This document shows, one piece after another, positions 668 through 45,122 of a stretch of 64,000 bases of DNA. A program made the translations under genes and the position numbers. Each line of letters begins with the position of its first letter. Position 1 is the first letter of the stretch. The notes under the pieces are model-generated. The model was not told the DNA's origin, ran no database searches, and saw nothing but the letters and a program-made list of their open reading frames with translations. Source of the stretch: Octopus sinensis (Eukaryota); assembly GCF_006345805.1 (NCBI RefSeq), contig NC_043006.1, forward strand, positions 27,094,001-27,158,000, written 5' to 3'.

Positions 668-3343
668 GAGGGAGGAGGAGCTACAGACGTTGGACATAGA
701 AGGTAGCTGGAAATTCCTACGGGACAGCTTGCTGAGTGCCACAGACCAAGTCTGTGGATGGTGCAAAGTCCCTTCCAGACCTAGAGTTACGTGGTGGTAG
801 ATAGTGCCATTAGTGCAAAGAAACAGGCCTGGAAAGCCTGGAGGGATGGGGGTAGCAGGGAACTGTACCAAGTAGCTAAAAGGGAGGCTGGGCGGCAGGT
901 ATATAGCCAAAGATGTAGCAGAAAAGAAGAAGTTTGCCAATGTCCAGCGACGTGAGGACCAAAGAACTGAGGTATTTCGGATTGCTAGACAGTGTGTGAG
1001 AGAAAATAGTGATGTTACAGGAGAGAAATGTGTTCGCATGGATGATGGGGCACTTGCTTTTAATGTTGGTGAAAAGAAAGAGGCTTGGAGAAGCCATTAT
1101 GAAAGACTGCTGAATGTGGAGAATGAATGGGAGGAGGAGAGCCTGCCAAATGTTGACCCAGTAGAGGGACAAGCTATCCGAATAGACAGCTCCCTTGTAG
1201 TTAAGGCAATTAAGGGTATGAAACCAGGTAAAGCCCCCGGCCCATCAGGAATCACGGCTGAGATGCTTAAAACAGCTGGTTATGTGGGCTATGGCCTAGT
1301 CACCCGCATTGTAAACCAGGTAGTTCATAATGGAGTCATACCCAATGACTGGTGTAGCAGCACCAAGTCAACTGCTACAAGGGTAAGGGTGATGCTCTAG
1401 ACAGAAATAACTACAGGGGTATTAAACTGTTGGATCAGGTGATGAAGGTCACACAGAGGGTCATAACCCATCTCATTAGGTAGAGAATTTGCTTAGATGA
1501 GTTCGGTTTTGTGCCGGGTAGAAGCACCACTGATGCTATATTCCTGGTCCGACAACTGCAGGAGAAGTACCTAGCTAAAGATAAACCCCTCTACATAGCT
1601 TTTGTGGACTTGGAGAAAGCCTTTGACAGGGTCCCCCGATCCCTTATCTGGTGGTCGATGCGGAAACTGGAGATTGACGAATGGCTAATAAGGGCTGTAC
1701 AGGCCTTATACAGAGAGGCTGTCAGCAAGGTGAGGATTGGCAACGAATATAGTGAAGAATTCCGGGTAGAAGTAGGTGTAGACCAAGGTTCAGCCCTCAG
1801 TCCCCTTTTATTCCTCATAGTCCTCCAGGCAATAATAGAGGAATTCAAAACAGGTTGCCCCTGGGAGCTCCTCTATGCTGATGACCTGGCCCTCATAGCA
1901 GAATCATTACCGGAACTAGAAAAGAAATTTCGGGTGTGGAAGCAAGGGTTAGAATCAAAGGGCCTTAGAGTAAATGTAGCAAAGACCAAAGTTATAGTAA
2001 GCAGAAAGGCGAACTCAGCACACACCCCAAAGGGCAGGTGGCCCTGCTTGATCTGTAGGAAAGACGTAGGTAGAAACTCCATAAGATGCACCCAGTGTAA
2101 GCTATGGACGCATAAGAGGTGCAGCAACATCAAAGGGAAATTAACTGATAAGATAACTTTCATGTGCGGCAGATGCACAGGGACAATAGACACCACAAAT
2201 ACTCAGAAAACAGATTCCATCACACTCCAGGAGGAGAAACTATAAGTAGTCACTAGTTTCTGCTACCTGGGTGACCAAGTTAGTAGTGGAGGTGGATGCT
2301 CAGAGAGTGTCACCACTAGAATACGAATAGCCTGGGCAAAGTTTAGAAAGCTCCTACCCCTACTGGCGACAAAGGGTCTCTCACTCAGAGTGAAGGGTAG
2401 ATTGTATGATGCATGTGTGCGAACTGCCATGCTTCACGGTAGTGAAACATGGGCTGTGACTGCAGAGGACATGTGTAGACTTGAAAAAAATGAAGCTAGC
2501 ATGATCCGCTGGATGTGTAATGTCAGTGTGCACGCACGACAGAGTATAAGCACTCTGAGAGAAATGCTGGACATAAGAAGCATCAAATGTGGTGTGCAAG
2601 ACCGACGCTTGCGATGGTATGGTCATGTACTGCAGATGGATGAGGAGAGATGTGTGAAGTGCCGCTCCCAAACAGTTGAAGGAATCAGGGGGAGAGGTAG
2701 ACCCAGGAAGACATGGGATGAGGTAGTCAAGCATGACCTCAGAGCGTTGGGCCTCACTGAGGCAATGGCGAAGGACCGAGATCTCTGGAGATATGCTGTG
2801 ACTGCAAAGACCCGGGCTGCTTCCTGTACCAGTTCCGCATAGCCCCTGCCCATTCAAAGTACCTTGGATCCCAGAACATCCCGCTGTGCTTGAGGAGACC
2901 TGTTGAGTCAAGTACATGAACATCGAAATAAATATCAATGGAAATAGTAGTTGTGATACCTGTGCCGGTGGCACATAAAAAGCACCATCCGAACGTGGCC
3001 GTTGCCAGTGCCGCCTCGACTGGCTTCTGGGCCGGTGGCACATAAAAAGCACCATTTGAACGTGGTCGATGCCAGCGCCGCCTTGGCTGGCTTCCGTGCC
3101 GGTGGCACGTTAAAAGCACCAACCGATCGTGGCCGATACTAGACTCCCCTGGCGCCTGTGCCGGTGGCACGTAAAAAGCACCCACTACACTCGCGGAGTG
3201 GTTGGCGTTAGGAAGGGCATCCAGCCGTAGAAACACTGGCAGATCAGACTGGAGCCTGGTGCAGCCCCTGGCTTCCCAGACCCCGGTCGAACCGTCCAAC
3301 CCGTGCTAGCGAGGAAAACGGACGTTAAACGATGATGATGATG
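668..3343 (+). mobile_element. RTE-clade LINE, 5'-truncated and decayed
   Basis: ORF pieces 996-1400, 1511-2245 and 2390-2842 contain RT motifs (FVDLEKAFDRV, QGSALSP, LYADD). The 3' UTR has tandem repeats and a (GAT)n tail; there are stops and frameshifts. Confidence 0.95.
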
Positions 3344-17775: not shown

Positions 17776-18729
17776 TCATCATCATCATCGTTTAACGTCC
17801 GTTCTCCATGCTAGCATGGGTTGGACGGTTCGACCGGGGATCTGGGAAGCCAGAAGGCTGCACCAGGCTCCAGTCTTATCTGGCAATGTTTCTACAGCTG
17901 GATGCCCTTCCTAACGCCAACCACTCCGTGAGTGTAGTGGGTGCTTTTTACGTGACACCTGCACAGGTGCCAGGCGAGGCTGGCAACGGCCACGGTCAGA
18001 TTGGTGTATTTTATGTGCCACCGGCACGGAAGCCAGTGGAGGCGGCGCTGGCATCGGCCACGAGTCGGATAGTGCTTTTTACGTACCACCAGACCAGGGA
18101 TCCTGGCTGGTTCAATTCGATTTCGATTTCGCTTGCCCCAACATGTCTTCGCAAGCAAAGGGGGTTGGCATGGGTGCCTGTCGTCGGATGAGGTTCTATA
18201 TCGACTTCGCTTGCCTCAACAGGTCTTTGTGTCCAAGGGAGGAAAGGCATTCATAAGTGGGCTGGGCTCACTTGTCCTGCCTGGTCTTCTCACGTACAGC
18301 ATATTTCCAAAGGTCTCGGTCGCTGGTCATTTCCTCAGTGAGGCCTAAAGTTCAAAGGTCGTGCTTCACCACCTCGTCCCAGGTTTTCCTGGGTCTACCT
18401 CTTCCACGGGTTCCCTCAACTGCTAGGGATTGGCACTTTCTCACACACCTAACTTCATCCATTCTCGCCACATGACCATACCAGAGCAATCGTCTCTCTT
18501 GCACACCACAACTGATGCTTCTTAGGTACAACATTTCTCTCAAGGTACTAACGCTCTGTCGAGTATGTACACTGACATTACACATCCATCGGAGCATACT
18601 GGCTTCATTCCTCACGAGCTTACGCATGTCCTCAGCAGTCACGGCCCATGTTTCACTGCCATGTAGCATGGCTGTTCGTACACATGCATCATACAGTCTG
18701 CCTTTTACTCTGAGCGAGAGGCCTTTAGT
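17776..18729 (-). mobile_element. RTE LINE 3' portion
   Basis: Minus ORF 18352-18732 matches the C-terminus of the 31940 ORF, followed by the 3' UTR repeats and tail. Truncated at a microsatellite. Confidence 0.92.
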
Positions 18730-18733
18730 CACA

Positions 18734-18746
18734 ATATATATACATG

Positions 18747-18791
<45 letters not shown>

Positions 18792-19090
18792 ATATATATA
18801 TGTATGTGTATATATATATGTATGTGTATATATATATGTATATGTATATATATATGTATGTATATGTATATACACATGTATGTATATATGTATGTGTATA
18901 TATCTATATATGCATGTGTGTGTATATATATATGCATGTATGTATATATGTATGTGTATATATCTATATATGCATGTGTGTGTATATATATATGCATGTA
19001 TATATATATGCATGTATATATATGTATGTGTATATATCTATATATGCATGTGTGTGTATATATATATATGCATGTATATATATATGTATG

Positions 19091-19130
<40 letters not shown>

Positions 19131-19155
19131 AGTATGTATATATATATATGTATGT

Positions 19156-19191
<36 letters not shown>

Positions 19192-19218
19192 GTATATATA
19201 TATGTATGTATATGTATA
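18734..19218. repeat. Compound (TA)/(TG) microsatellite
   Basis: Seen directly. Confidence 0.98.
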
Positions 19219-19508
19219 TCACGTGATCACGTGACCATCAGATGCTTTACACATCGCTGGTCACAATGCGTTCGCATTGTTTTAGCCTTCGAATGACGCC
19301 ACCCCGCTGGCTAAGCGAGCAGGCCAACAGAAGAGTGAGAGAAAGAGTGGTGAAAGAGTACAGCAGGGATCACCACCCCCTGCCGGAGCCTCGTGGAGCT
19401 TTTAGGTGTTTTTGCTCAATAAACACTCACAACGCCCGGTCTGGGAATTGAAACCGCGATCCTACGATCGCGAGTCCGCTGCCCTAACCACTAGGCCATT
19501 GCGCCTCC
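19219..19508 (-). mobile_element. tRNA-derived SINE
   Basis: Minus head GGAGGCGCAATGGCCTAGTGG...GGTTTCAATTCC with A and B boxes. Confidence 0.85.
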
Positions 19509-19509
19509 G

Positions 19510-19996
19510 TATATGTATATATATATGTGTGTGTATATATATATATGTATGTAATAATATATATATGTATATTTATATATATGTATATATATATGTATAT
19601 ATATATGTATATATATATGTATATATATATGTATATATATATGTATATATATATATGTATATATGTCTATATATATATGTATTTATATATATATATGTAT
19701 TTATATATGTATATGTATTTATATATATATATGTATTTATATATGTATATGTATTTATATATATGTATATATATATATATGTATATATGTATATGTATTT
19801 ATATATATGTATATATGTATATGTATTTATATATATGTATATATATATATATGTATATATGTATATGTATTTATATATATGTGTATATGTATTTATATAT
19901 ATGTATATATGTATATGTATTTATATATATGTATATATGTATATGTATTTATATATATGTATATATGTATATGTATTTATATATATGTATATATAT

Positions 19997-20027
<31 letters not shown>

Positions 20028-21385
20028 TTATATATATGTATGTATATATGTATATGTATTTATATATATGTATATATATATATGTATTTATATATATGTA
20101 TATATATATATGTATTTATATATATGTATATATTTATATATATGTATATATATATTATATATATATATATTATATATGTATATATGTATATGTATATATA
20201 TATTATATATGTATATATGTATATGTATATATATATGTATATATGTATATATGTATATGTATATATATATGTATATATGTATATGTATATATATATGTAT
20301 ATATATATGTATATATGTATATGTATATATAATATATTATATATGTATATATATATGTATATATGTATATATGTATATATATATATATATATTATATATA
20401 TGTATATATATATATATATATTATATATGTATATATATATGTATATATATATGTATATATATATGTATATATTATGTATATATATATGTATATATATATA
20501 ATATATATATGTATATTATATATGTATATATGTGTATATATATATGTATATATGTGTATATATATATGTATATATATGTATATATATATGTATATATATA
20601 TGTATATATATATGTATTTATATATATGTATTTATATATATGTATATGTATATATATATGTATATGTATATATATATGTATATATATATGTATTTATATA
20701 TATGTATATGTATATATATTGTATATATATGTGTATATATATGTGTATATATATGTGTATATATATATGTATTTATATATATGTATTTATATATATGTAT
20801 ATATATATATATGTATATATGTGTATATATATGTGTGTATATATATATGTATGTGTGTATATATATATGTATGTGTGTATATATGTATGTATGTGTGTAT
20901 ATATATATGTATGTGTGTATATATGTATGTATGTGTGTATATATGTATGTATGTATGTATATATGTATGTATATATGTATATATGTCTATATATATATGT
21001 ATATATGTCTATACATATATGTATGTATATATATCTATATATATATGTATATATGTCTATACATATATGTATGTATATATATCTATACATATATGTATGT
21101 ATATATGTCTATACATATATGTATGTATATATGTCTATACATATATGTATGTATATATGTCTATATGTATATGTATTTATATATATATGTATATATATGT
21201 ATATGTATTATATATATGTTTTATATGTATATGTATTTATATATATATGTATATATATGTATATGTATTTATATATATATGTATATATATGTATATGTAT
21301 TTATATATATATGTATATATATGTATATCTGTGTATATATATATGTTTATATACGTATATTTGTGTATATATATGTACATATATG
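19510..21385. repeat. About 1.9 kb compound (TA)n/(ATGT)n microsatellite
   Basis: Seen directly. It generates the spurious Y/I/M/C ORFs. Confidence 0.98.
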
Positions 21386-21386
21386 T

Positions 21387-21500
21387 GGAGGCGCTGTGGC
21401 CCAGTTCTTAGGGCAGCGGACTCACAGTCGTAGGATCGCGGTTTCGATTCCCAGACCGGGTGTTGTGAGTGTTTATTGAGCGAAAACACCTAAAGCTCCA
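21387..21500 (+). mobile_element. Truncated copy of the same tRNA-SINE family
   Basis: ggaggcgctgtggcc...ggtttcgattcccagaccggg is the reverse complement of 19393-19508. Confidence 0.85.
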
Positions 21501-27780: not shown

Positions 27781-27844
27781 GTGCGAGATGTTACAAAAAT
27801 AGAAAATACACAGTTGAATGGTGAAAAATTAGCTAAAGTAAAAG
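27781..27844 (+). CDS. BRCA1: BRCA1 coding exon 6
   Basis: ttttattag|GTG...AAAG|gtattg, 64 nt, VRDVTKIENTQLNGEKLAKVK(G). Supplies the phase 0 to 1 shift needed to reach the next exons. Confidence 0.7.
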
Positions 27845-31645: not shown

Positions 31646-34516
31646 TACATGTTTAGCACTTCTACATGTTTAGTGACTTTAGGATCAGGACTAAGAGGAC
31701 GACTAGAAGACGACCAACATGGAGAAGAAAGGTCTGGAAGCTTAAAGACCCTGCAAATGGACAGAGATTTAGAGACATGTTACTTGAAGCCTTTGACGAA
31801 ATAGAAGGGGGTATAGCTACACATGGGGTAGAAGACAATTGGACGCTTCTAAGGGACAACCTGCTGAAAGCCACTGACCAGATCTGTGGCTGGTGCAAAG
31901 TCCCCTCAAGACCCAAAATAACGTGGTGGTGGAACAATATTGTTGACAGGGCTATTAGACAAAAGAAACAGGCTTGGAAGGACTGGAAGAACGGTGGTAG
32001 CAGGGAAGTGTATCAGACTGCCAGAAGGGAAGCTAGGAGGCAGGTTTTATTTAGCCAGAGGGGAAGCAGATAAGAAAAAATTTGCCAATGTCCTGCGCCG
32101 GGAGGATGAAAGACTTGAGGTATTTCGTGTTGCAAGACAGTGTGTGAGAGAGAATCGTGACATGGTAGGAGAAAAATGTGTTCACATGGATGACGGCCCA
32201 CTTGCGCTAAATGAGGATGCAAAGAGAGAGGTTTGGAGACGCCACTATGAAAGGTTGCTGATTGAGGAAAATGAATGGGATAAAGAGAGTCTGACGAATG
32301 TCGACCCAACAGAGGGACCAGCAATCCGAGTTGACAGTTCCTTGGTAGTTAAGGCAATTACAAGCATGAAAACAGGGAAAGCCCCAGGCCCATCAGGTAT
32401 TACTGCAGAGATGCTCAAAATATCTCGTAGTGTCGGCTATAGCCTAGTCACCCGTATAGTTAACCAGGTGATACACAAAGGAGTCATACCCAATGACTGG
32501 TGTAGCAGCATAATAGTCAACTGGTGTAGCAGCATAATAATCAACTGCTACAAAGGTAAAGGTGATGCCCTAGATACAAATAACTACAGGGGTATCAAGC
32601 TGCTGGATCAGGTAATGAAGGGTACGGAGAGGGTTATAGCCCAACTAATTAGAGAGAGAATTAGCTTAGATGAGATGCAGTTTGGGTTCGTGCCAGGGAG
32701 AAGTACTACTGATGCTATATTCCTGGTAAGGCAGCTGCAGGAGAAATACCTAGCCAAAGATAAGCCCCTGTACCTGGCTTTTGTTGACATGGAGAAAGCC
32801 TTCGACATGGTCCCCCGATCCCTTATCTTGTGGTCAATGAGGAAACTAGGGATAGATGAATGGTTAGTTAGAGTTGTGCGAGCCATGTACAGAGACGCTG
32901 CTAGTAAGGTGAGGGTTGGCAACGAGTACAGTGAAGAATTCCGGGTAGAGGTTGGGGTCCACCAAGGTTCAGTCCCCAGTCCCCTCCTATTTATCATAGT
33001 CCTCCAGGCAATAACGGAGGAATTCAAGACAGGATGCCCCTGGGAGCTCCTCTATGCTGATGACCTTGCACTAATTGCTGAGTCACTATCAGAACTGGAG
33101 GAGAAGTTTCAGGTGTGGAAGCAAGGTCTAGAATCGAAGGGCCTCAGAATCAATCTAGCCAAAACCAAAGTCCTAATAAGTAGGAAAGTAGACAAGTCAC
33201 AAACGCCTTCAGGTAGATGGCCCTGCTCGATCTGTAAAAAAGGTGTAGGTAGAAACTCTATAAGGTGCACCAAGTGCAAGCTATGGACACATAAGAGGTG
33301 TAGCAATGTCAAAGGAAGGCTAACTAGGAAAATAGTTTTTGTCTGTGGCAGATGCTCAGGAGCAATAAACACTGAAAATGTGCAGAGACCAACGTCTACC
33401 ATGTTCCAGGGAGAAAAACTAGAAGTAGTTGATAGCTTCCGCTACCTAGGTGACCAAGTCAGTAGCGGGGGTGGGTGTGCTGAAAGTGTAACGGCTAGAG
33501 TAAGAATAGCCTGGGCAAAGTTTAGAGGGCTCTTACCCCTGCTGGTGACAAAAGGCCTCTCACTCAGAGTAAAAGGCAGACTGTATGATGCATGTGTACG
33601 TACAGCCATGCTACATGGTAGTGAAACATGGGCTGTGACTGCTGAGGATATGCGTAAGCTTGCAAGAAATGAAGCCAGTATGCTCTGATGGATGTGTAAT
33701 GTCAGTGTTCATAATCAACAGAGTGTAAGTACCTTGAGAGAAAAGTTGGACCTAAGAAGCATCAGTTGTGGTGTGCAAGAGAGATGTCTGCGCTGGTATG
33801 GGCATGTAACGAGAATGGGTGAAGATAGTTGTGTGCAAAAGTGCCACACTCTAGCAGTTGAGGGAACCTGTGGAAGAGGTAGACCCAGGAAAACCTGGGA
33901 CGAGGTGGTGAAGCACGACCTTCGAACTTTAGGTCTCACCAAGGAAATGACTAGAGACCGAGACCTATGGAAGTATGCTGTGCGTGAGAAGACCTGGCAA
34001 GACCAGTGAGAAAAGTCAAAATCAAACCAAACCAATCAGATATCAGAAAGCAGAACCAAAATTGAGGCTGATCAACATCAGTGGAAATTGCAGCTGTGGT
34101 TAAGCGAACCATCCGATCGTTTATCCGTTGCCAGCCTCGCCTGGCCCCCATGCCGGTGGCACGTAGAAGCACCATCCGCACGTGTCCGTTGCCAGCCTCG
34201 CCTGGCTCCCGTGCCGGTAGCACGTAAAAGCACCATCCGTTCGTGTCCGTCACCAGCCTCGCCTGGCCCCCGTGCCGGTGGCACGTAAAAACACCATCCG
34301 TTCGTGGCCGTTTGCCAGCTCTGTCTGGCACCTGTGCAGGTGGCACGTAAAAAGCACCCACTACACTCATGGAGTGGTTGGTGTTAGGAAGGGCATCCAG
34401 CTGTAGAAACACTGCCAAATCTGACTGGGCCTGATGAAGCCTTCCGGCTTCACAGACCCCAGTTAAACCGTCCAACCCATGCTAGCATGGAAAGCGGACG
34501 CTAAATGATGATGATG
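31646..34516 (+). mobile_element. RTE-clade LINE, 5'-truncated, nearly intact RT ORF
   Basis: ORFs 31666-32073, 31940-33688 and 33692-34009. One frameshift near 32045 and TGA at 33686-33688. YADD motif, PHD-like finger and (GAT)n tail. Confidence 0.96.
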
Positions 34517-35671
34517 TTCTGATATACTGCTATTTGCCTTGTATGAAAATATTGATACAGCATTAAAAATTGTATCTATGTTAGGATACTAGAAAGACAG
34601 ATGTCACCCATGAGTTCATTTGTGCTTTACTAATTACTAATTTTGGGTAACTTCCTAAATCCCATTATCATAGTTCTTTTAAGAAAAAAGTAAAAACAAA
34701 CAAAAAAAGAAACCCTTTATTTTATCCAGGATTGTAGAAGTCTGTATTTTGTACTCTAGTTTCTTTTCTGTATATCCTATGCAATGATTATCCCTGACAG
34801 TTATATGAAGGATTAGAGTTGGACTAAACAAAAGAAAATAGTCAATGGGATTCAGCAATCAATAAGATTGTGATTGGGCCTAGTTTTTAAGTTTCCTTTC
34901 TTTCTGAAATAAGTTCACTGGTGCTGTCACTATTGGTACAGGAATTAGTTTCGCTAGTAGAAATAGAAACATTCAACTCCAAGTTTTTGTTGCATTTTTC
35001 ATTTGCTGCAACAGTTTCTTCCTTTCGAAATTCTTAAAATTTGGTTTCACTACTACTTCTTAATTGGAAGGTGCTATTTGTTTTTAAAAAGGCAAAAAAA
35101 TCTGGAAATAAGAATTAAAAAATGTGAAAATTAGCCAGTGAACCCAAAATTCACATTATAGTAATGTCAGGCAGTATATAACAAGTGTTATAGCCCTAAT
35201 GTAGTCACAAAATTTATGTTGATATTTTGGTTTAAAATGATTAGTCAAATACATGTGGTAACATATGACCAAAAGTAGTCTCAGGCAGCTTACTAATGAA
35301 AGGGTTTAGTGATTGTTTTAGCTAATAAAAACACAGATTTGGCAAATTGAAATTTAGTTAATTGGTAGAGAATTTGGGCTTTTCAACCAACTTGGACGTA
35401 ATCAGGATTATATTTCTTACTTTTCCCCCGTCAATTACCTGACTTTTTTTTTTCAATATTTTGTCTGAAGCTTATTTGATTATGAGCAAATAATTTCCTG
35501 TTTTATTGCAAACTTCATTAAAACAATTTTCATGCTATTTAATGTAGATAATGTGGAGGAAATTGGGGAGGTATTTAAATGAGATCATTTTAATGATCTT
35601 TTGAGTACATTAAAAATATAATTGTAAAAGCATTTCTCAGTGCATTCTAATTTTTTCTGATTTTGATATAG

Positions 35672-36460
35672 ATCAATCTTTCTCTGTCGTCATAGGTCAT
35701 GAATTATATAAGAGTCTGAAAAATTACAGTAGAGAAAATGATATTCATAAAAATAGAAAGAGAATACTTGAGTGGCTTCAACAGCTTCCTCTTTTTTTTA
35801 ATGATTGGAATGAAGATAACTTTGCAGTAGAAAATAGTAACTGTAAGGAGTTTCAACCAGCTGACAATAATATGAAGAGGATGCCAACACAGTGTATTTC
35901 TAATTTTCCTCTAAAAGAAAATGTTTGTGCTCATTATGATCTCATTTCTGTATCAGAGCCTTATTCAATTCATTCTGAAGTTGTCAACAGTGACTGCATT
36001 TACTCAAAAAAATGCTTGAGGAAAGAACAAAATACTTTTCTTTCTGCAACAGCATCAAAGTCCATACGCGATGTTACCAAAAGAACATTGAATCCAAAAA
36101 AACAATCAACTTCTTATGAAAGACTTCAACAGCAAATATTAAAAAGTATTGAAAAATTTAAAAAGTTCAGAGCAAAAAGAGAAAGAAATGTTTCCTCAAG
36201 TGTAAACATAACTCCAAAGAATTATGTTATTGACTTAACTTCTCTTAAGTCAGTCCCTCTTCAGCATGCATACACTACTGATGCATTTAGTAAAAAAAGA
36301 AAAAGCAACAAAATACTTGGAACTGAAAAATTCTTAATGAATTTGAGTGAGGATAAAAGTAAAAATCAGGAGAATAAATCCAAAGTTTGGGAAGATTCAA
36401 AACTGCCATACATTGAGAGTATACAAACAACAAGCAAGCAGAATCTGTATAAAATGAAAA
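35672..36460 (+). CDS. BRCA1: BRCA1 coding exon 7 (3' boundary uncertain; see findings)
   Basis: Acceptors at 35671 and 35695, both phase 1. The frame is open through the 35872-36540 ORF and contains KRILEWL, resembling the KVNEW motif of BRCA1. Phase-1 donors follow 35842, 36460 and 36784. Confidence 0.6.
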
Positions 36461-36902
36461 GTAAGAATTCTGAAAGTGCAGTTACTTTACCACCAGCTTT
36501 CATAGCTGGAACTCCTTTTCTAAATATACATCATGGCTAGTTAGCAAAATACATTAAATGCAATAAAAACCAGTCATCTTTGTATGATATTCATAAGAAA
36601 TTTGAAAATGGAATAGATGTTATAGACATCACTAGTGATCTTTCTTCTCAGTTTAATTTGAATAATTTTAAAAGCAGATAATTTTGTCACTAAGGGGAAC
36701 ATTTCCTATGAGCAATTAAATGCTAATCTGATGTTCTCTACAAGACATCAAGGCATCAGGTGCCTACTCTTTGCAATATTCATGGTGAGTTTATCAACTG
36801 TTAAGCGATGAGGAATTACTTGCAAGATATACAAAAGTAACAAGATGGACATACATATACAAGACTTACAAATGTGTATGTATGTTTATGCATTTGTATT
36901 AT

Positions 36903-37140
36903 ATCATCATTATTATCATCATATAACGTCCATTTCCTATGCTGGCATAGGATGAACAGTTTGATAGGTGCTGGCAAGACTTGGGAACCACACTAGGCTC
37001 CATTGTCTGTTTTGACACGGTTTCTACAGCTAGATGCCCTTCCTAATGCCAACCACTTTACAGAGTGTACTGGATACTTTTTACATAGTACCAGGCACCA
37101 ACAGGGTTACCAAGCAACTTCCAAGACAAAACTCCTTAGC
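36903..37140 (-). mobile_element. RTE 3'-tail fragment (old)
   Basis: tttctacagctagatgcccttcctaatgccaaccac core shared with the other tails. Confidence 0.8.
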
Positions 37141-38059
37141 TGGCGGGGGGGGGGGGCAGGTAATATAAGGCAGGGATGGCTTTTTGCCAGTTGAGAGATT
37201 AATGGTAAAGGAGGATAAGGATAAGTGTCTTGTTGTAGAGTAGCTTTATGGATGTCCCAGTTGGAAAAGAAAGGAGAGCAAGTTAGTAAGATAAGGAGAG
37301 TAATAGGGAGAGAGATGGTGGTGAAGATGTGTCAAGGGATGCTCTTGGGGGACATTGGGGGTGGTGAGAATAAGTGAAGTGATACAGAGGTTTGGAGTGG
37401 ATGAGCAGGCAGGAAAGAGGTGACTAGCAAATGATGGAGAGAAATACAGGAGGGGTGGGTGGGTGGAGTGTCTTCTATTATAGCTCTGGTCTAACCAATG
37501 CTTTGTGAGTGAATCTGATAGAAACTGCAGAAAGCCCATTGTGTGTGTGTGTGTCTGAATGTTTACATTGTGCACTTCACATGAAAAAGCACTGCAGACA
37601 GTGAAGTCAGTTTATATTTCCCTTTTAATATAACATCCAGTAGGCAAGTGTTATGTAAGTTCTTTTACTTGAAGAATGGATGAGGGTTAGCAACAGCAAG
37701 GATAGTATTGTTTGAAAGGAAATCACTTTCTGATGTTGCTGCTACAAGCACGTTGTTTCACTTTAAAATAACTTATATTAGTGTTTTCATATACATAAAA
37801 TAACTCTTTTCCAAAAGTGCTGTTTTACATGGAAGAAGTTTTAGTCAATAATTCACATACCAGGATTATACCAAAAGTAATGCAAAGGCTGTCTTAACTT
37901 TTTTTTTATTAACTGACATAGGTCCTTTAAATTGCTTATGCTGGTAGAATACCTCTTCCTTTCTAGTAACTTTTTCTCTTCCTTGCTGACAAATAATAGG
38001 TTTCAAGGAGAAGCAGTGTGCCATTACTGAGTTTTTGATGAAGGAATAGTACAATCTGT

Positions 38060-39415: not shown

Positions 39416-39493
39416 AGAAAGATGAGAAAAAAGATGGTACAGATGGTCTCAAGAGCTGTTCAGGTATTAAAGAATGTGAACCTGCTGATTTAG
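39416..39493 (+). CDS. BRCA1: BRCA1 coding exon 8
   Basis: Pyrimidine tract...aacag|AG...TAG|gtaatt, 78 nt, phase 1 to 1, KDEKKDGTDGLKSCSGIKECEPADL. Confidence 0.75.
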   Translation, partial: RKMRKKMVQMVSRAVQVLKNVNLLI

Positions 39494-42400
39494 GTAATTT
39501 TTAATCTATATATATATAAAAGAGAGTTTGTATGCATTTGAAAACTGAGTTGCTGATTTTGATGTATGGGGTATCAAAAGATTCAGTAATCTTTCGGTTA
39601 CCAAATAAACTTTATTTTCATCAACATATTTTTTATGTTATCTAACAACCAGCTTTAGTTATTTGAAAGACACTGCTCTACAGCAACCAGGTTTCATTAG
39701 AAAGTGAAAATAGTTTCACACTTTCAATTTGAACCAAAATTACAAAGTGTTGCATTACAACTGATGATATGTGAATAATGAAAGTAATGTTTTTCCGAAT
39801 TAGTCACATCTGTACTATAATAAAGAAAGCTGCTTATCATCTATGTATATATATTGGGTCACCCCATCAGTAATGTGGTTTTTTTCAATTGCATGAACTA
39901 AAATTTGGAGAGGGATGGGATAAACTACCTGCATCAACTTGCTATAAAAGCAGGTAGTGATTTTAACTTGTACTTATTCTTAATGCAAGTTTTGAAGAGT
40001 GCAGTTCGATTTTAGCAGTTATTTTTTCAAACCGATGATGGAAGTGATAGAGGAGTGTAGTGACATCATTTTACTAGTGAGCGCACACGCAACGTCATTC
40101 TTCAGTGTGTGTGTGCGGAACGTCATTCTTCAGTGTGCGTGTGCGGGGCTGGAACCTTCTAGAGCCTTCTGGAAAGGCCTAAGGAAGTTCCCTCATGCAC
40201 ATGCGCTAGAGACTGGGGAAGAAAATTCTATCGCATTCCTTGTTAGCGTCGTTGACTTGAGACACGGCTATTGAAGAGAAAGGACGTGTTAAACGTGTGA
40301 TCAGCCATTCTCCTGTTCCAGACGCTTGGGATTTGACCTGCTCTGTTGCTGCTGAATTTGTTGTAAGAATCTTACAAACGTTAAAATTCAGCTTTGCTAT
40401 ATTGAACCAAGTGGATACCAATATACCAATGTGCTTCATTTATAAATAAGAGAATAAAGAATCATATATATTTTTAAAGTTACGTTTTGTTCCTGACTGG
40501 TAGATTCTGGAAACAAAAAGAAAGGAAATTGTGTTGAACCCAAGTTGCACCCAAAAAGTGTAAAGAATCAACCAGTTCCCTTTACAGGAGCATATTCAGC
40601 ATATTTTGCTTTATGAGTTCAACGAAGGCAATGAAATCAAAGTGATGGTCACATTTGGAATGTTTATTAATCTATAAAGAATCTCTGGTTTCATAAAAAG
40701 ATGGGATGGTCTTAGGATGCTTTTGTTTGCACTAATGTTTGAGGAATTGATAAATAAATTGTGATTCCTTGCTAACCTGCTAGTTTAAGTTTGAAGAAAG
40801 AAATTCATCAGACTGGTTTGCTTAGCAAAATTTCTATTTTAGACTAGAAAGTAGAGGAGTCTAACAAAATACTTTTTGTTTTTACTTTATTTTTATTGCA
40901 ACAATAAATTTTGGCTGCTATGTGTTCAGTTTTGTTTTATTGTACTTAAATATTCATTGTAACAAATTTCATTACAAAGAGACTTAGTGTTTTTTCAATA
41001 GCATTAAGGCCAAGGATTGAAACAAATTTCAAATTTCATCTGTATACAATTATTGATCTGTATTCAAATACATGTTTTTGTTGTCTTCAAAACACATGTT
41101 AATATAACTCACCTACTAAACCTACCACTACCAAGATTGTTGCAATATTGCCCGCCACTTCATTCTTACCCTAGTGTCTCTTAGATATTGTCATTTCATA
41201 CTTTCATCCTGTATTCTTATTTTCCTGTCTTAAACACATTTTATTGTCAAAGTTACTTCTAGTGTGTAATGTACTCTTCACTTTTACTTTCTTTACTGCT
41301 ATCTAGCTCTCTTGCCTCCCCCCCACTTCGATGCTTAATTCATTTTAGAAAACTTCTACACACTCTTCCTACTTTTAAGCAACACAATAAAATTCTTTGT
41401 AACTGTGACAGATGCATTGTCTCTGATAATCTACCTCATGATGTCAAATACATAATATTACCAAACCTGTATTTCAGCTTCTTTGACCTTTTTTGAAGTA
41501 CTGTGTTTATATCTGGCATGGTACTACTGATAGACATAAATTTTAGATATTTATTTTAGACTGTAGCAACAAAGTTGATTGGAAAAGATTCACTCACTAC
41601 AACAAATGATTCTTTAATGCTGCTTCTTTTACTACTACTACTACTACAGCCGTTACTTCCCTGAACCAGCAAGCTGCACACCACCTTCACCCTAAACTTT
41701 TTTCTATTTCATAACTTCCATTGTGTCTTGCTCCACCTTCAAATTCTTCACTAAACACTTTTCAATCCTTCTTCTTCAGAACTTCACTCTTCTGGAGACC
41801 CCTCTCCTCACCATATTTCTCATATAGGTATCAATCTGCAGAAGTTCAAACTGACCGTCAACAGCATTGGTCTTACTTGGTTGAAAGGACCTACAATGGT
41901 CATGTGTGCAATTCCTATTCTGTGCATATGAATAATTAAAAAAATTACCATTTACAGATATGATTTTGTTTGGTTTCTCCTTAGAGGCTTATCTCATATA
42001 GTTAGACCTCATTGTACATGAACTTAATTTTTACTGAACTGTCTGGAAAGAGGGGAAAAAAAGCATGATTTCAGTGGCTCAGTTGATGAAATTCTAACCT
42101 TCATGTTTCACATCAGTCAATTTTTATTCTTTTTATTTCAAGAAAGATAAGTGTAAGCAGAGAAAGTTGTACTAAAGAATTGAAGTACTGAGGAAGAAAG
42201 TTTGGATAGAATATTTGGTACAAGGAACGGGAAGTGGTATACAGGTGTTAATGTTAGAATCAAAATTAGATTTAATAGGGATAATAAAAGGAGAAAGTAT
42301 CTGGGGGACTCAGATGTAGTGTTGGTGAGTAAGAGTATGTGTATTTCATTGCTGGTATTTTATTTTTATAGATGTGATCAGTGTTCATTGTGTTTGCTTC

Positions 42401-42621: not shown

Positions 42622-45122
42622 AAATACAATCTGAAGATGTAAGTAAGCCTTCTAGTTTCTTACACGCATCTGATAGAAAGGATTCTGGCTCTGATTTATC
42701 ACCATCAAATAGATTAGCTTCTGAAACAAGTTGTTGCTCTTCAATAAAAAGTGCATCTCAATTCAAAGATGATTCTTTAATGTCTTCTGCTGTTGATATG
42801 TTAATTTCTGATAAACTTGATAAAGTAAATGATAGTACATTTCATAAGGATACTGATAAATATTCAAAACCACTTCATAATTCAATGAAGGAATTAACAG
42901 AAACAGGAAATTCTTCAATTGTTGATGACTCAATTTTACCTTGTAATTTGTCAAATTTATCAGCATCAAATAAACAAATAAGTACTGAAGAAGTTTACAA
43001 TGATGCTGCCAAAGAAATTATTTCATCTAAACAGGCTTTGAAGATGCCAAACAAAACTAGTAAATCACAGGCAGTATCAAATGATAGCAAATCTCCCTCA
43101 AATTTCTTGTTAATCCCAGATTTTAAACTTGTGGATTATACTCTCACCCAGAGCTCAGTAATGTCAGAAGACAATATAAAGCTTAATTCTTGTATTGGTC
43201 AACCTCAGATTAAGGAAAGTATTTCATCCCAAGATCTTGAAAGAAATAATGAAAAGCAGTTAAATACTGGAAAAAATATAGAAGATGATTCTGTCTCTCT
43301 ACCTTCAAATCACTCTTTGTGTGTGCGAGAAACTTGTAAAGAAAATGTTGGAGATATTAGTCAAAATATGCTTTTAGAAGGAACTTTTCACGATAAAATT
43401 ATCAGACAATTCAATTGTAAATCAGATGAAAATCTGAAGAATTCTAATTCTCTTTCCACTGACTCTTCTCCATTATTCAGTAGTAACTCTAAAGTTGACA
43501 ATAAAGAAATATATGAAAATCCAGAGTCTTTGCAAGATGTTGTTCTCATGTATGATAAAGAATTAACTCCTCCCCTCATAATGAACAGTTCTCAAGACAA
43601 GAATTGTAAAATCATTGTATCTGAGTTTGATCCTGAAGCAAAATCCACCATTCCAAAAACTATTTCAGAAAAAACATCTGATTTAGAATCGCAAGGATCC
43701 TTACCTTCAATGCAACCTTGTAAAATTGAATCAATTGAATGTCAGCCGTCTTCATGTAGTGAGATTCCTTGTAGTGTAGATGTTGAAAACAATTATGTAA
43801 ATATATTGCCAGAACTACAGAAACTGTATCAGAATGAAACACCTAAGGCTGAGAGAAAAGAAACACCAGAAGAAAATGTTGTATTTAATAATGAATCATG
43901 TTCAAAGAACCTACCTGTTCAATCAAAATACCAAAAGGATATACCTCAAAAGGATCAATCTACTACAACTCCTAAAACAATGATGTTTACTACTGACTGT
44001 TCTACATTAGATTCACAGATTGTTAAACCAACTAGAGCATCAAAAAGGAAATGTTTTTCTCTTGATGGAAGAAGCTTAAAATCAGTTGTCTCTGATAAAG
44101 TTTTCAGCTGTCAATCTGAAATATATAGCAGTTCAAAAAAAGATAATTTAGTTGATTCTTTTAGGAGCAAAGCAAAATCTAAAGGCAATTGTATATTTTT
44201 AGGTAGTAGTAGTAGTCAGCCAGTTGAAGAAAAGGAAAAACAAATACTAGAAAATTTGTCTGACCATGTCATATCTTTGCAAGGAAAGTCCTCACCTTTG
44301 AAGGTTCAAAAATGTCCAAGGAAGAGAAGAAAATCTAATGAAGAAAACTATTTTGAAATAAAATGTGATGATTTGAAAAATTCGGCATCCATTGGCAATC
44401 AGTCACAAGAAAGGGTTATCCCCAATGAAATTACTGAAGAAAAGTCTGTTGACTCCTCAAATGTTAGGGACAGTTACAATGATTCCTTAACACAAGCACC
44501 TTCGTGTGACAGAGAATCATTAGAATTTCTAACTGATAAAACAATTTCACCAATGCCACTTTCTCCTACACCTTCTAGTATAACCACAGATGTCGTAAGT
44601 GAGCCAATTGTCACTAGTTGGACACACGGTGCAGTTCCTCTAGATAGTGATGGGATGAATAACTTAAAAAGGAACACTTCAACCGAAAGCAAAGAAATAC
44701 AAATATTTCAAGATATCGATATTGAAAACAGTAATCCATTGTTACCAGTTGATAATGGAATTGAAATTGAGCAGTCTGGAAGAATACAGAATTTTAGTTT
44801 AAATTTAGAAAATTCAAATAGTGTTGCAAATATTTCTCAAGAGTCACAAGAACCAAAAGCTAAGCAAACTCTAATCACGGTGAGAAAGGACTCTACAAAG
44901 ATTCATTCAGAAATGAGTCAAACAACAGCTAATGAGCCAAAAGAAGGCATAAGCACAATAAAATTTCAACATATAGATACATTAAAAACCTCACACAGCA
45001 TTGAAATGGAATCACAGGGAAATCTGTCAGGAGTTCAAAAAGAAGGTGGTTTACAAGTTGAAACAATTAAACATGGAAATACTGCTGTTGATATATCATC
45101 ACAACTTGATGTACCAAATGAT
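42622..45122 (+). CDS. BRCA1: BRCA1 large central exon (2501 nt; Ser-rich, low complexity)
   Basis: tttcag|AA, in frame with ORF 42780-45182, donor GAT|gtaagt at 45123. Several SQ/TQ sites and a basic NLS-like KCPRKRRKS. Confidence 0.92.

What the first reader, a model, noticed from the sequence alone, without database searches (positions are those of the whole stretch)
35672..36790. BRCA1 exon with three phase-matched donors, the strongest of which adds stop codons
Seen: from acceptor 35671, donors follow 35842 (ACT|GTAAGG), 36460 (AAA|GTAAGA) and 36784 (ATG|GTGAGT, closest to consensus). All are phase 1 and match the next exon, giving 171-, 789- or 1113-nt exons. The longest contains TAG at 36538-36540 and further stops from 36679. 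Flanking phases also allow clean skipping. Inference: either a regulated productive-versus-NMD switch (or a truncated RING-only isoform), or an exon caught contracting, with its 3' part decaying after an internal donor took over.
Basis: partly seen in the sequence, partly recalled or inferred. Interest (0 to 1): 0.7.

Follow-up and report, generated by a model that had tools for sequence, protein, structure and literature searches.

The report
Octopus BRCA1 exon shortened by new donor
An exon of the octopus BRCA1 gene lost its last 108 codons when a one-base change created a new splice site inside it, and the cast-off piece has since picked up stop codons and frameshifts yet stays unusually conserved: a clean example of a known way gene structures evolve.

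Summary
The window is the Octopus sinensis BRCA1-homolog locus: RefSeq isoform X1 maps exactly to 18 exons.

Corrections:
- The acceptor in the annotated models is 35695, not 35671. The exon is 35696-36460 (765 nt).
- The next exon is a missed 78-nt mini-exon (39416-39493).
- Donor 35842 creates a stop codon at either junction.

All annotated isoforms in three Octopus species use donor 36460 or skip the exon.

- A more distant, unidentified octopod has AT instead of GT at 36461. Its 109-codon frame stays open up to the conserved donor 36784.
- All three Octopus species share the new GT and two frame-breaking deletions (-2, -1).
- O. sinensis and O. vulgaris share the TAG. O. vulgaris has one more -1 deletion.
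- So the stops are real, not assembly errors.

Unexpectedly, the first 229 nt of the abandoned segment are the most conserved non-exonic stretch of the gene. They show 2 differences between O. sinensis and O. bimaculoides, where about 13 are expected. A splicing-regulatory role or residual NMD-coupled use of the old donor therefore stays open.

This is a new, well-dated case of partial exon intronization, of modest interest.

The parts
27781..27844 (+). Upstream exon 6 (ends AAG|GTATTG, phase 1)
   Evidence: Exact mapping of XP_036362302.1 with GT-AG refinement.
35670..35671 (+). It is not used in any annotated model.
   Evidence: Annotated proteins read 'AKVK|GHELYK'. The 24 nt that follow have a 4-nt deletion in O. 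bimaculoides and a TAA in L001.
35694..35695 (+). Acceptor AG used in the annotated models (tctctgtcgtcatag|GTC)
   Evidence: Conserved in all four genomes.
35696..36460 (+). Exon 7 of the BRCA1 homolog as annotated. It is a 765-nt cassette exon in phase 1-1, encoding 255 residues of the poorly conserved central region.
   Evidence: Isoforms X1-X4 include it and X6/X7 skip it. dN/dS is 0.5-0.8. No Pfam domain.
35843..35848 (+). It is really codons TGT AAG (Cys-Lys) and would be non-productive if spliced.
   Evidence: Invariant as coding sequence in four genomes. The junction gives TAG or TAA. No annotated use.
36461..36466 (+). Current donor GTAAGA. The G at 36461 is inferred to be derived: Octopus species have GT and the outgroup has AT.
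   Evidence: Used in annotated proteins of O. sinensis, O. vulgaris and O. bimaculoides.
36461..36784 (+). Abandoned 3' part of the ancestral exon (324 nt), now intronic in the annotated models. It is an intact 109-codon frame in the outgroup contig L001.
   Evidence: 0 of 20,000 shuffles are stop-free, and the other frames have 7 and 18 stops. dN/dS against Octopus is 0.43-0.55.
36461..36689 (+). Unusually conserved block, with 2 substitutions and no indel between O. sinensis and O. bimaculoides
   Evidence: none of 13,715 other intronic 229-nt windows is as conserved. The intron mean is 5.8%.
36538..36540 (+). TAG nonsense codon. It is shared with O. vulgaris and reads CAG in O. bimaculoides and L001.
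36676..36681 (+). Site of the 2-nt deletion (AGAGAT to AGAT), shared by the three Octopus species. It creates the TAA at 36679.
36724..36726 (+). TAA, and the site of the 1-nt deletion in an A-run, shared by the three Octopus species. The net change of -3 returns to the old frame.
36785..36790 (+). Ancestral donor GTGAGT (ATG|GTGAGT). It is still intact and is the best consensus match in the region.
   Evidence: Invariant with its flanks in four genomes. Scores 6.0 bits. The L001 frame ends 5 codons beyond it.
36810..37771 (+). 962-nt insertion carrying an interspersed repeat, 25 nt downstream of the old donor. It is present in the Octopus species and absent in L001.
39416..39493 (+). Mini-exon 8 (78 nt, phase 1-1), the true downstream partner of exon 7. 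It is also a cassette exon.
42622..45122 (+). Large central exon 9 (2501 nt)

Best explanation
Exon 7 of the Octopus sinensis BRCA1 homolog was shortened at its 3' end, a case of partial intronization.

In the ancestor, the exon ran about 1.09 kb from the acceptor at 35695 to the near-consensus donor at 36784. On the stem of the sinensis/vulgaris/bimaculoides lineage, an A-to-G change at 36461 created an internal phase-matched donor, AAA|GTAAGA. Splicing from this donor to the 78-nt mini-exon (39416) removes 108 codons of a fast-evolving, domain-free region without changing the frame.

Once out of the protein, the 324-nt segment lost its coding constraint:
- It collected a 2-nt and a 1-nt deletion, shared by all three species.
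- It then gained a C-to-T nonsense change, shared by sinensis and vulgaris.
- O. vulgaris gained one further 1-nt deletion.

Today the exon is a 765-nt cassette exon, either included through donor 36460 or skipped. Any residual use of donor 36784 would put five premature stops into the mRNA and should trigger nonsense-mediated decay.

Shown:
- the exon model in the window;
- the state of every site in four genomes;
- the intact outgroup frame;
- the nested distribution of the lesions.

Inferred:
- the polarity (long exon ancestral), from open-frame logic with a single outgroup;
- which of the donor gain and the frameshift came first;
- that the conserved 229 nt after the new donor now act in splice-site choice.
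For: - Gene and exon model: XP_036362302.1 maps exactly to 18 exons, with the exon 7 junctions at 27844^35696 and 36460^39416.
- Donor 36460 is used in annotated proteins of three species, from two annotation pipelines ('QNLYKMK|KKDEKK', 'QNLYELR|KKDEKK'). Skipped forms are annotated in all three species.
- Four-genome alignment: GT at 36461 in the three Octopus species and AT in L001. TAG only in O. sinensis and O. vulgaris. The -2 and -1 deletions occur in all three, with an extra -1 in O. vulgaris. Donor 36784 is invariant.
- The L001 frame is open for 109 codons up to the old donor. The other two frames have 7 and 18 stops, and 0 of 20,000 shuffles are stop-free. The same contig occurs in at least two runs.
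- In the L001-equivalent frames, O. bimaculoides has no stop apart from the frameshifts.
- dN/dS of the segment between L001 and Octopus is 0.43-0.55, like exon 7 at 0.5-0.6.
- All three indels inside exon 7 are multiples of three (12, 12 and 6 nt). All three indels in the abandoned segment are not.
- The concept is established: the intronization model predicts 3n length, premature stops and a transient alternative-splicing phase (PMC2586383).
Against: - There is only one outgroup, of unknown species (Logan assembly of SRR11869391). Polarity rests on open-frame logic, not on parsimony over several lineages.
- No transcript data were available. Annotated models do not show minor or NMD-targeted isoforms, so donor 36784 may still be used.
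- The segment is not decaying at the neutral rate. 36461-36689 is more conserved than any intron or coding window of the gene, so 'abandoned' is incomplete as a description.
- The two shared deletions sum to -3. This could be chance (about 1 in 3), but a simple neutral story does not predict it.
Confidence: 0.75

Rival explanations
1. Regulated two-donor switch (AS-NMD). Both donor 36460 (productive) and the old donor 36784 (five premature stops, so mRNA decay) are used in Octopus. The choice tunes BRCA1 output, and the conserved 229 nt is the exonic or regulatory core of a 'poison' extension. This is compatible with the contraction history and adds a present-day function to it.
For: - Donor 36784 and about 18 nt around it are intact in all four genomes, and it is the best consensus match.
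- 36461-36689 has 2 differences where about 13 are expected, and no other intronic window matches it.
- High conservation of stop-containing alternative regions is typical of regulated unproductive splicing (established knowledge).
Against: - No annotated isoform in three species uses donor 36784.
- The last 95 nt before donor 36784 diverge at a neutral-like 6%.
- O. vulgaris tolerates a further indel inside the conserved block.
- Conservation next to a cassette exon is equally expected for intronic splicing enhancers. A similar block follows the mini-exon.
- No RNA data were available.
Confidence: 0.2
2. Reverse polarity. The short exon with donor 36460 is ancestral and 36461-36784 was always intron. 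The L001 lineage lost the GT and exonised the segment up to the next good donor.
For: With one outgroup, parsimony alone cannot polarise the GT/AT difference or the two indels.
Against: - It needs an intronic stretch to give a 109-codon open frame ending exactly at a phase-matched consensus donor after +2 and +1 insertions. 0 of 20,000 shuffles are stop-free.
- dN/dS of about 0.5 in the segment indicates protein-level constraint over much of the L001-to-Octopus path.
- In the L001 frames, O. bimaculoides still has no stop.
Confidence: 0.05
3. Read-through or truncated-protein isoform. Transcripts that do not splice at 36460 encode a RING-plus-exon-7 protein ending in the segment, 26 extra residues in O. 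sinensis and 73 in O. bimaculoides. This would resemble human BRCA1-IRIS, and the conservation would be protein-coding.
For: In O. bimaculoides the frame continues to the TAA at 36679, which nearly coincides with the end of the conserved block at 36689.
Against: - The TAG at 36538 removes 47 of those codons in O. sinensis and O. vulgaris, yet there is no substitution in 36541-36689 on either lineage.
- No annotated product of this kind exists.
- No domain was detected.
Confidence: 0.05
4. Artefact: the stops and frameshifts are assembly or sequencing errors in the window.
For: The two deletions lie in short repeats (AGAG, AAA), as indel errors often do.
Against: - The same -2 and -1 deletions occur in three independent assemblies: the window, GCA_951406725.2 and GCA_001194135.2.
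- The TAG occurs in two of them.
Confidence: 0.01

Closest known systems
Intronization of exonic sequence (Catania & Lynch 2008, PMC2586383; Irimia et al. 2008, cited there)
   Same: - Coding sequence becomes intron through a new splice site.
- The removed piece has 3n length (324 nt).
- It carries premature stops.
- It lies in a poorly constrained part of the protein.
- The exon is alternatively spliced.
   Different: - Only the 3' end of an exon is removed by a donor shift that enlarges an existing intron, so no new intron is created.
- The order of stop or frameshift versus donor gain is not resolved.
- The intronized piece is partly under strong sequence constraint.
Human BRCA1 exon 11 splicing: full length, D(11q) from an intra-exonic donor, and D(11) from skipping (PMC3353946)
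   Same: - The same gene family and the same central, domain-free region between RING and BRCT.
- An internal in-frame donor inside a long exon, plus whole-exon skipping.
- Sequence constraint around the internal donor that is not explained by the protein.
   Different: - In human both donors give productive mRNAs and the long form is the main one. In Octopus the long form is broken and only the short form is annotated.
- The exons are not shown to be positionally homologous.
- No splicing assay exists for the octopus gene.
Alternative 5' splice-site choice coupled to nonsense-mediated decay (regulated unproductive splicing, 'poison' extensions)
   Same: - Two phase-matched donors.
- The distal one adds premature stops far upstream of later junctions.
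- The alternative region is highly conserved.
   Different: Use of the distal donor has not been observed, so this is resemblance only.

Membership tests
BRCA1 orthologue | N-terminal C3HC4 RING and C-terminal tandem BRCT domains in one protein encoded at this locus | tested here: met
   P0002 and P0009 carry PF00097/PF13923 (RING) and PF00533/PF16589 (BRCT) and are named BRCA1 homolog by NCBI and UniRef. Residues 1-1776 map exactly to the window.
Cassette (skippable) exon | Symmetric phase, length a multiple of three, and isoforms with and without the exon | tested here: met
   Phase 1-1 and 765 nt. X6 and X7 in O. sinensis, X4 and X5 in O. bimaculoides, and CAI9728236 in O. vulgaris lack the exon. 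These are annotation models, not raw reads.
Partial exon intronization / 3' exon contraction by a new donor | A relative keeps a continuous open frame through the segment that is intronic here | tested here: met
   The L001/L002 frame is open for 109 codons up to the old donor, and 0 of 20,000 shuffles are stop-free.
Partial exon intronization / 3' exon contraction by a new donor | The new splice site is lineage-specific and is the one used | tested here: met
   GT in the three Octopus species and AT in L001. It is used in the annotated proteins of all three. Polarity is inferred from one outgroup.
Partial exon intronization / 3' exon contraction by a new donor | Frame-disrupting lesions confined to the removed segment and nested on the phylogeny | tested here: met
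   The -2 and -1 deletions occur in three species, the TAG in two, and a further -1 in one. Indels in the retained exon are 12, 12 and 6 nt.
Partial exon intronization / 3' exon contraction by a new donor | The removed segment evolves like neutral intron afterwards | tested here: not met
   36461-36689 has 2 differences in 229 nt against a 5.8% intron mean, the most conserved of 13,715 windows. Only 36690-36784 is neutral-like.
Regulated alternative 5' splice site coupled to NMD | Both donors used in vivo, with the stop-containing form stabilised when NMD is blocked | not testable with these tools
   No RNA-seq access. The protein collection holds no transcript-derived ORFs for this region. 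Annotated isoforms show only donor 36460.
Regulated alternative 5' splice site coupled to NMD | Premature stop in the long form, more than about 50 nt upstream of a later exon junction | tested here: met
   Stops at 36538, 36679, 36691, 36709 and 36724, with at least 11 downstream junctions.

The most novel reading that the evidence does not exclude
The abandoned 3' part of the exon has been re-used rather than discarded. Its first 229 nt, frozen within Octopus although out of frame, would form a conserved regulatory module. That module would set the competition between the young weak donor (36460) and the old strong donor (36784), whose use now yields an NMD substrate. This would give the BRCA1 homolog a lineage-specific post-transcriptional dosage control that arose directly from an intronization event.
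Probability: 0.2. Interest if true: 0.6.

Novelty: new member of a known kind. Interest (0 to 1): 0.35.

Why it matters
Well-dated cases in which coding sequence turns into intron are rare. Here every step can be read from four genomes: the one-base donor gain, then the frameshifts, then a nonsense codon, then another frameshift. This gives a concrete test case for the intronization model.

The event lies in the central region of BRCA1, where the human gene also has an internal donor and whole-exon skipping. This part of the gene may therefore be recurrently remodelled by splicing.

The strong conservation of the cast-off segment hints that former coding sequence can be taken over quickly for splice-site control. 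For annotation, the practical point is that the strongest-looking donor is not the one in the annotated models.

Tried and rejected
- Donor 35842 as a productive site: rejected. The junction codon is TAG or TAA, the site is simply codons TGT AAG, and it has no annotated use.
- Acceptor 35671: rejected in favour of 35695.
- More species:
  - A word-index search with the window ORF found only P0001.
  - A search with a 141-aa piece spanning the old segment found nothing.
  - HMMER of P0001 against 1.8 billion representatives found only Octopus, plus weak hits to DUF4379 repeat proteins. I judged those spurious because they include residues read from the intron.
  - So no squid or other octopod comparison was possible.
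- Identity of the L001 species: a full-text search for the run accession prefix gave only an unrelated paper.
- Look-ups of shorter isoforms (P0007, P0017) for genomic DNA failed. The longest isoforms worked.
- RNA structure in 36440-36700: z-score -0.4, no signal.
- Pfam on exon 7 and on P0001: no domain.
- Compensated frameshift as a viable coding state: rejected. The shifted 19 codons contain four stops as a direct result of the shift.
- Assembly error: rejected by three independent assemblies.

Full report
**What is there**

The window is the Octopus sinensis BRCA1-homolog locus on the + strand. RefSeq isoform X1 (XP_036362302.1, RING plus tandem BRCT) maps residue for residue, 1-1776, onto 18 exons between 3970 and 63695.

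The sequence facts in the finding are correct:
- AG at 35670-71.
- GT after 35842, 36460 and 36784, with the quoted flanks.
- All three donors are phase 1.
- The frame is open from 35614 to 36537.
- In-frame stops sit at 36538 (TAG), 36679, 36691, 36709 and 36724.

On a generic donor matrix the three sites rank 1st (36784, 6.0 bits), 3rd and 4th of 46 GTs. Shared phase is not remarkable, because 18 of 44 GTs are phase 1.

**Corrections to the anatomy**

- Every annotated protein reads 'AKVK|GHELYK', so the acceptor is AG 35694-95 and the exon starts at 35696.
O. bimaculoides has a 4-nt deletion there and the outgroup has an in-frame TAA.
The 2.5-kb exon at 42622 follows it.
- Donor 35842 is codons TGT AAG. 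Spliced to either downstream exon it makes TAG or TAA at the junction, so it is not a productive option.

**Which donors are in the gene models**

- In O. sinensis (X1-X4), O. vulgaris (CAI9728238) and O. bimaculoides (X1, X2 and an older model), the exon ends at the 36460 donor ('QNLYKMK|KKDEKK', 'QNLYELR|KKDEKK').
- Other isoforms skip the exon ('AKVK|EKDEKK') or skip both the exon and the mini-exon ('AKVK|EIQSED').
- No model uses 35842 or 36784.
- These are annotation products, not read counts, and they would not show NMD substrates.

**Comparative evidence**

I obtained the orthologous DNA of three other genomes:
- O. vulgaris (GCA_951406725.2, locus L004).
- O. bimaculoides (GCA_001194135.2, locus L003).
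- An unidentified, more distant octopod from Logan assemblies of SRR11869391 and SRR11869384 (L001/L002). It differs by about 10% in the exon and 13-16% in the introns.

The alignment shows:
- Position 36461 is G in the three Octopus species and A in L001, so L001 has no GT there.
- The TAG at 36538 is shared by O. sinensis and O. vulgaris and is CAG in the other two.
- A 2-nt deletion (36676-78) and a 1-nt deletion (36725-26) are shared by all three Octopus species.
- O. vulgaris has one more 1-nt deletion.
- The donor at 36784 and its surroundings are invariant.

In L001 the frame runs open for 109 codons from the 36460 position to that donor and stops five codons into the intron. The other two frames hold 7 and 18 stops, and none of 20,000 shuffles is stop-free.

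Read in the L001 frames, O. bimaculoides has no stop at all apart from the frameshifts. dN/dS of the segment between L001 and Octopus is 0.43-0.55, the same as for the retained exon.

Indels in the retained exon are 12, 12 and 6 nt. Those in the segment are 2, 1 and 1 nt.

The lesions recur in independent assemblies, so they are not errors.

**Interpretation**

The simplest reading is that the ancestral exon ended at 36784. A single A-to-G change then created an internal, phase-matched donor on the stem of this Octopus group, and the 108 codons behind it dropped out of the protein and lost their frame.

The polarity is inferred from one outgroup and from open-frame logic. The order of donor gain and first frameshift cannot be resolved.

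**An unexpected feature**

The segment is not drifting. Divergence between O. sinensis and O. bimaculoides is:

| Region | Divergence |
|---|---|
| 17.7 kb of aligned introns | 5.8% |
| Exon 7 | 3.8% |
| Large exon | 3.4-7.1% |
| The abandoned segment | 2.5% (8 of 324, no indel) |

All but two of the eight differences lie in the last 95 nt. Positions 36461-36689 have 2 differences in 229 nt, and none of 13,715 other intronic windows of that size is as conserved. The only near rival lies just downstream of the mini-exon, which is also a cassette exon.

No RNA-structure signal was found (z = -0.4). I infer a sequence-level role in splice-site choice for a weak new donor that competes with a stronger old one 324 nt away. 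The alternative is continued minor use of the old donor as an NMD-coupled outlet. The data cannot separate these two. A read-through truncated protein is less likely, because nothing drifted after the TAG arose.

**Comparison with what is known**

- The kind of event is known: intronization, or a donor shift.
- The closest gene-specific parallel is human BRCA1 exon 11, with its intra-exonic D(11q) donor, D(11) skipping and non-protein constraint near the internal donor (PMC3353946).
- In human both forms are productive, and positional homology of the exons is not shown.
- Membership in 'regulated AS-NMD' is untested.
- Membership in 'partial exon intronization' is met on four of five features. 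It fails on 'neutral drift afterwards'.

**Verdict**

The 'contracting exon' interpretation is supported, and the 'NMD switch' is open. This is a new, well-dated member of a known kind of event, with one unexplained twist, and it is of modest interest.

Noticed in passing
window 36810-37771: A 962-nt insertion lies 25 nt downstream of the old donor 36784. It is present in the three Octopus species and replaced by 51 nt in the outgroup contig L001. It carries a copy (about 36885-37085) of an interspersed repeat with at least 12 copies in the window. It might have weakened the old donor.
   Followed up: partly
window 39416-39493; L001 about 3230-3310: This is a 78-nt cassette mini-exon between exon 7 and the large exon. 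In L001 a 4-nt deletion removes its CAG acceptor, but an AAAG| acceptor 6 nt downstream would keep the frame.
   Followed up: partly
window 39600-39900: A second strongly conserved intronic block lies just downstream of the mini-exon, with 1-3 mismatches per 100 nt between O. sinensis and O. bimaculoides. It is the only intronic stretch that approaches the conservation of 36461-36689.
   Followed up: partly
window 44946-44996: A 51-nt in-frame segment of the large exon is deleted in the O. bimaculoides genome. It is also missing from O. sinensis isoform X4, although it has no GT..AG ends. It could be a polymorphic deletion, or a model built from cross-species evidence.
   Followed up: partly
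window 35872 (ATG): O. sinensis X5 and O. bimaculoides X3 both start at the internal Met 'MKRMPTQ' inside exon 7. This implies an alternative 5' transcript structure that would give a RING-less product.
   Followed up: no
window 18700-21450: A very AT-rich microsatellite block of about 2.7 kb (GC 0.20, long 'YIYIYM'-type ORFs in all frames) lies in the 12.7-kb intron 2.
   Followed up: no
window 31940-33688 and 1511-2245: ORFs that look like non-LTR retrotransposon reverse transcriptases, judged from their translations only and not searched against any family. The first (582 aa) sits inside intron 6. Related fragments are scattered through the window.
   Followed up: no
P0001 residues 301-349 (equivalent to window 36640-36790): There are weak multi-stretch HMMER hits (E from 2e-8 to 7e-4) to DUF4379 treble-clef repeat proteins. 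The match includes 'GEF' translated from the intron, and the zinc ligands are absent. I judged it coincidental.
   Followed up: yes
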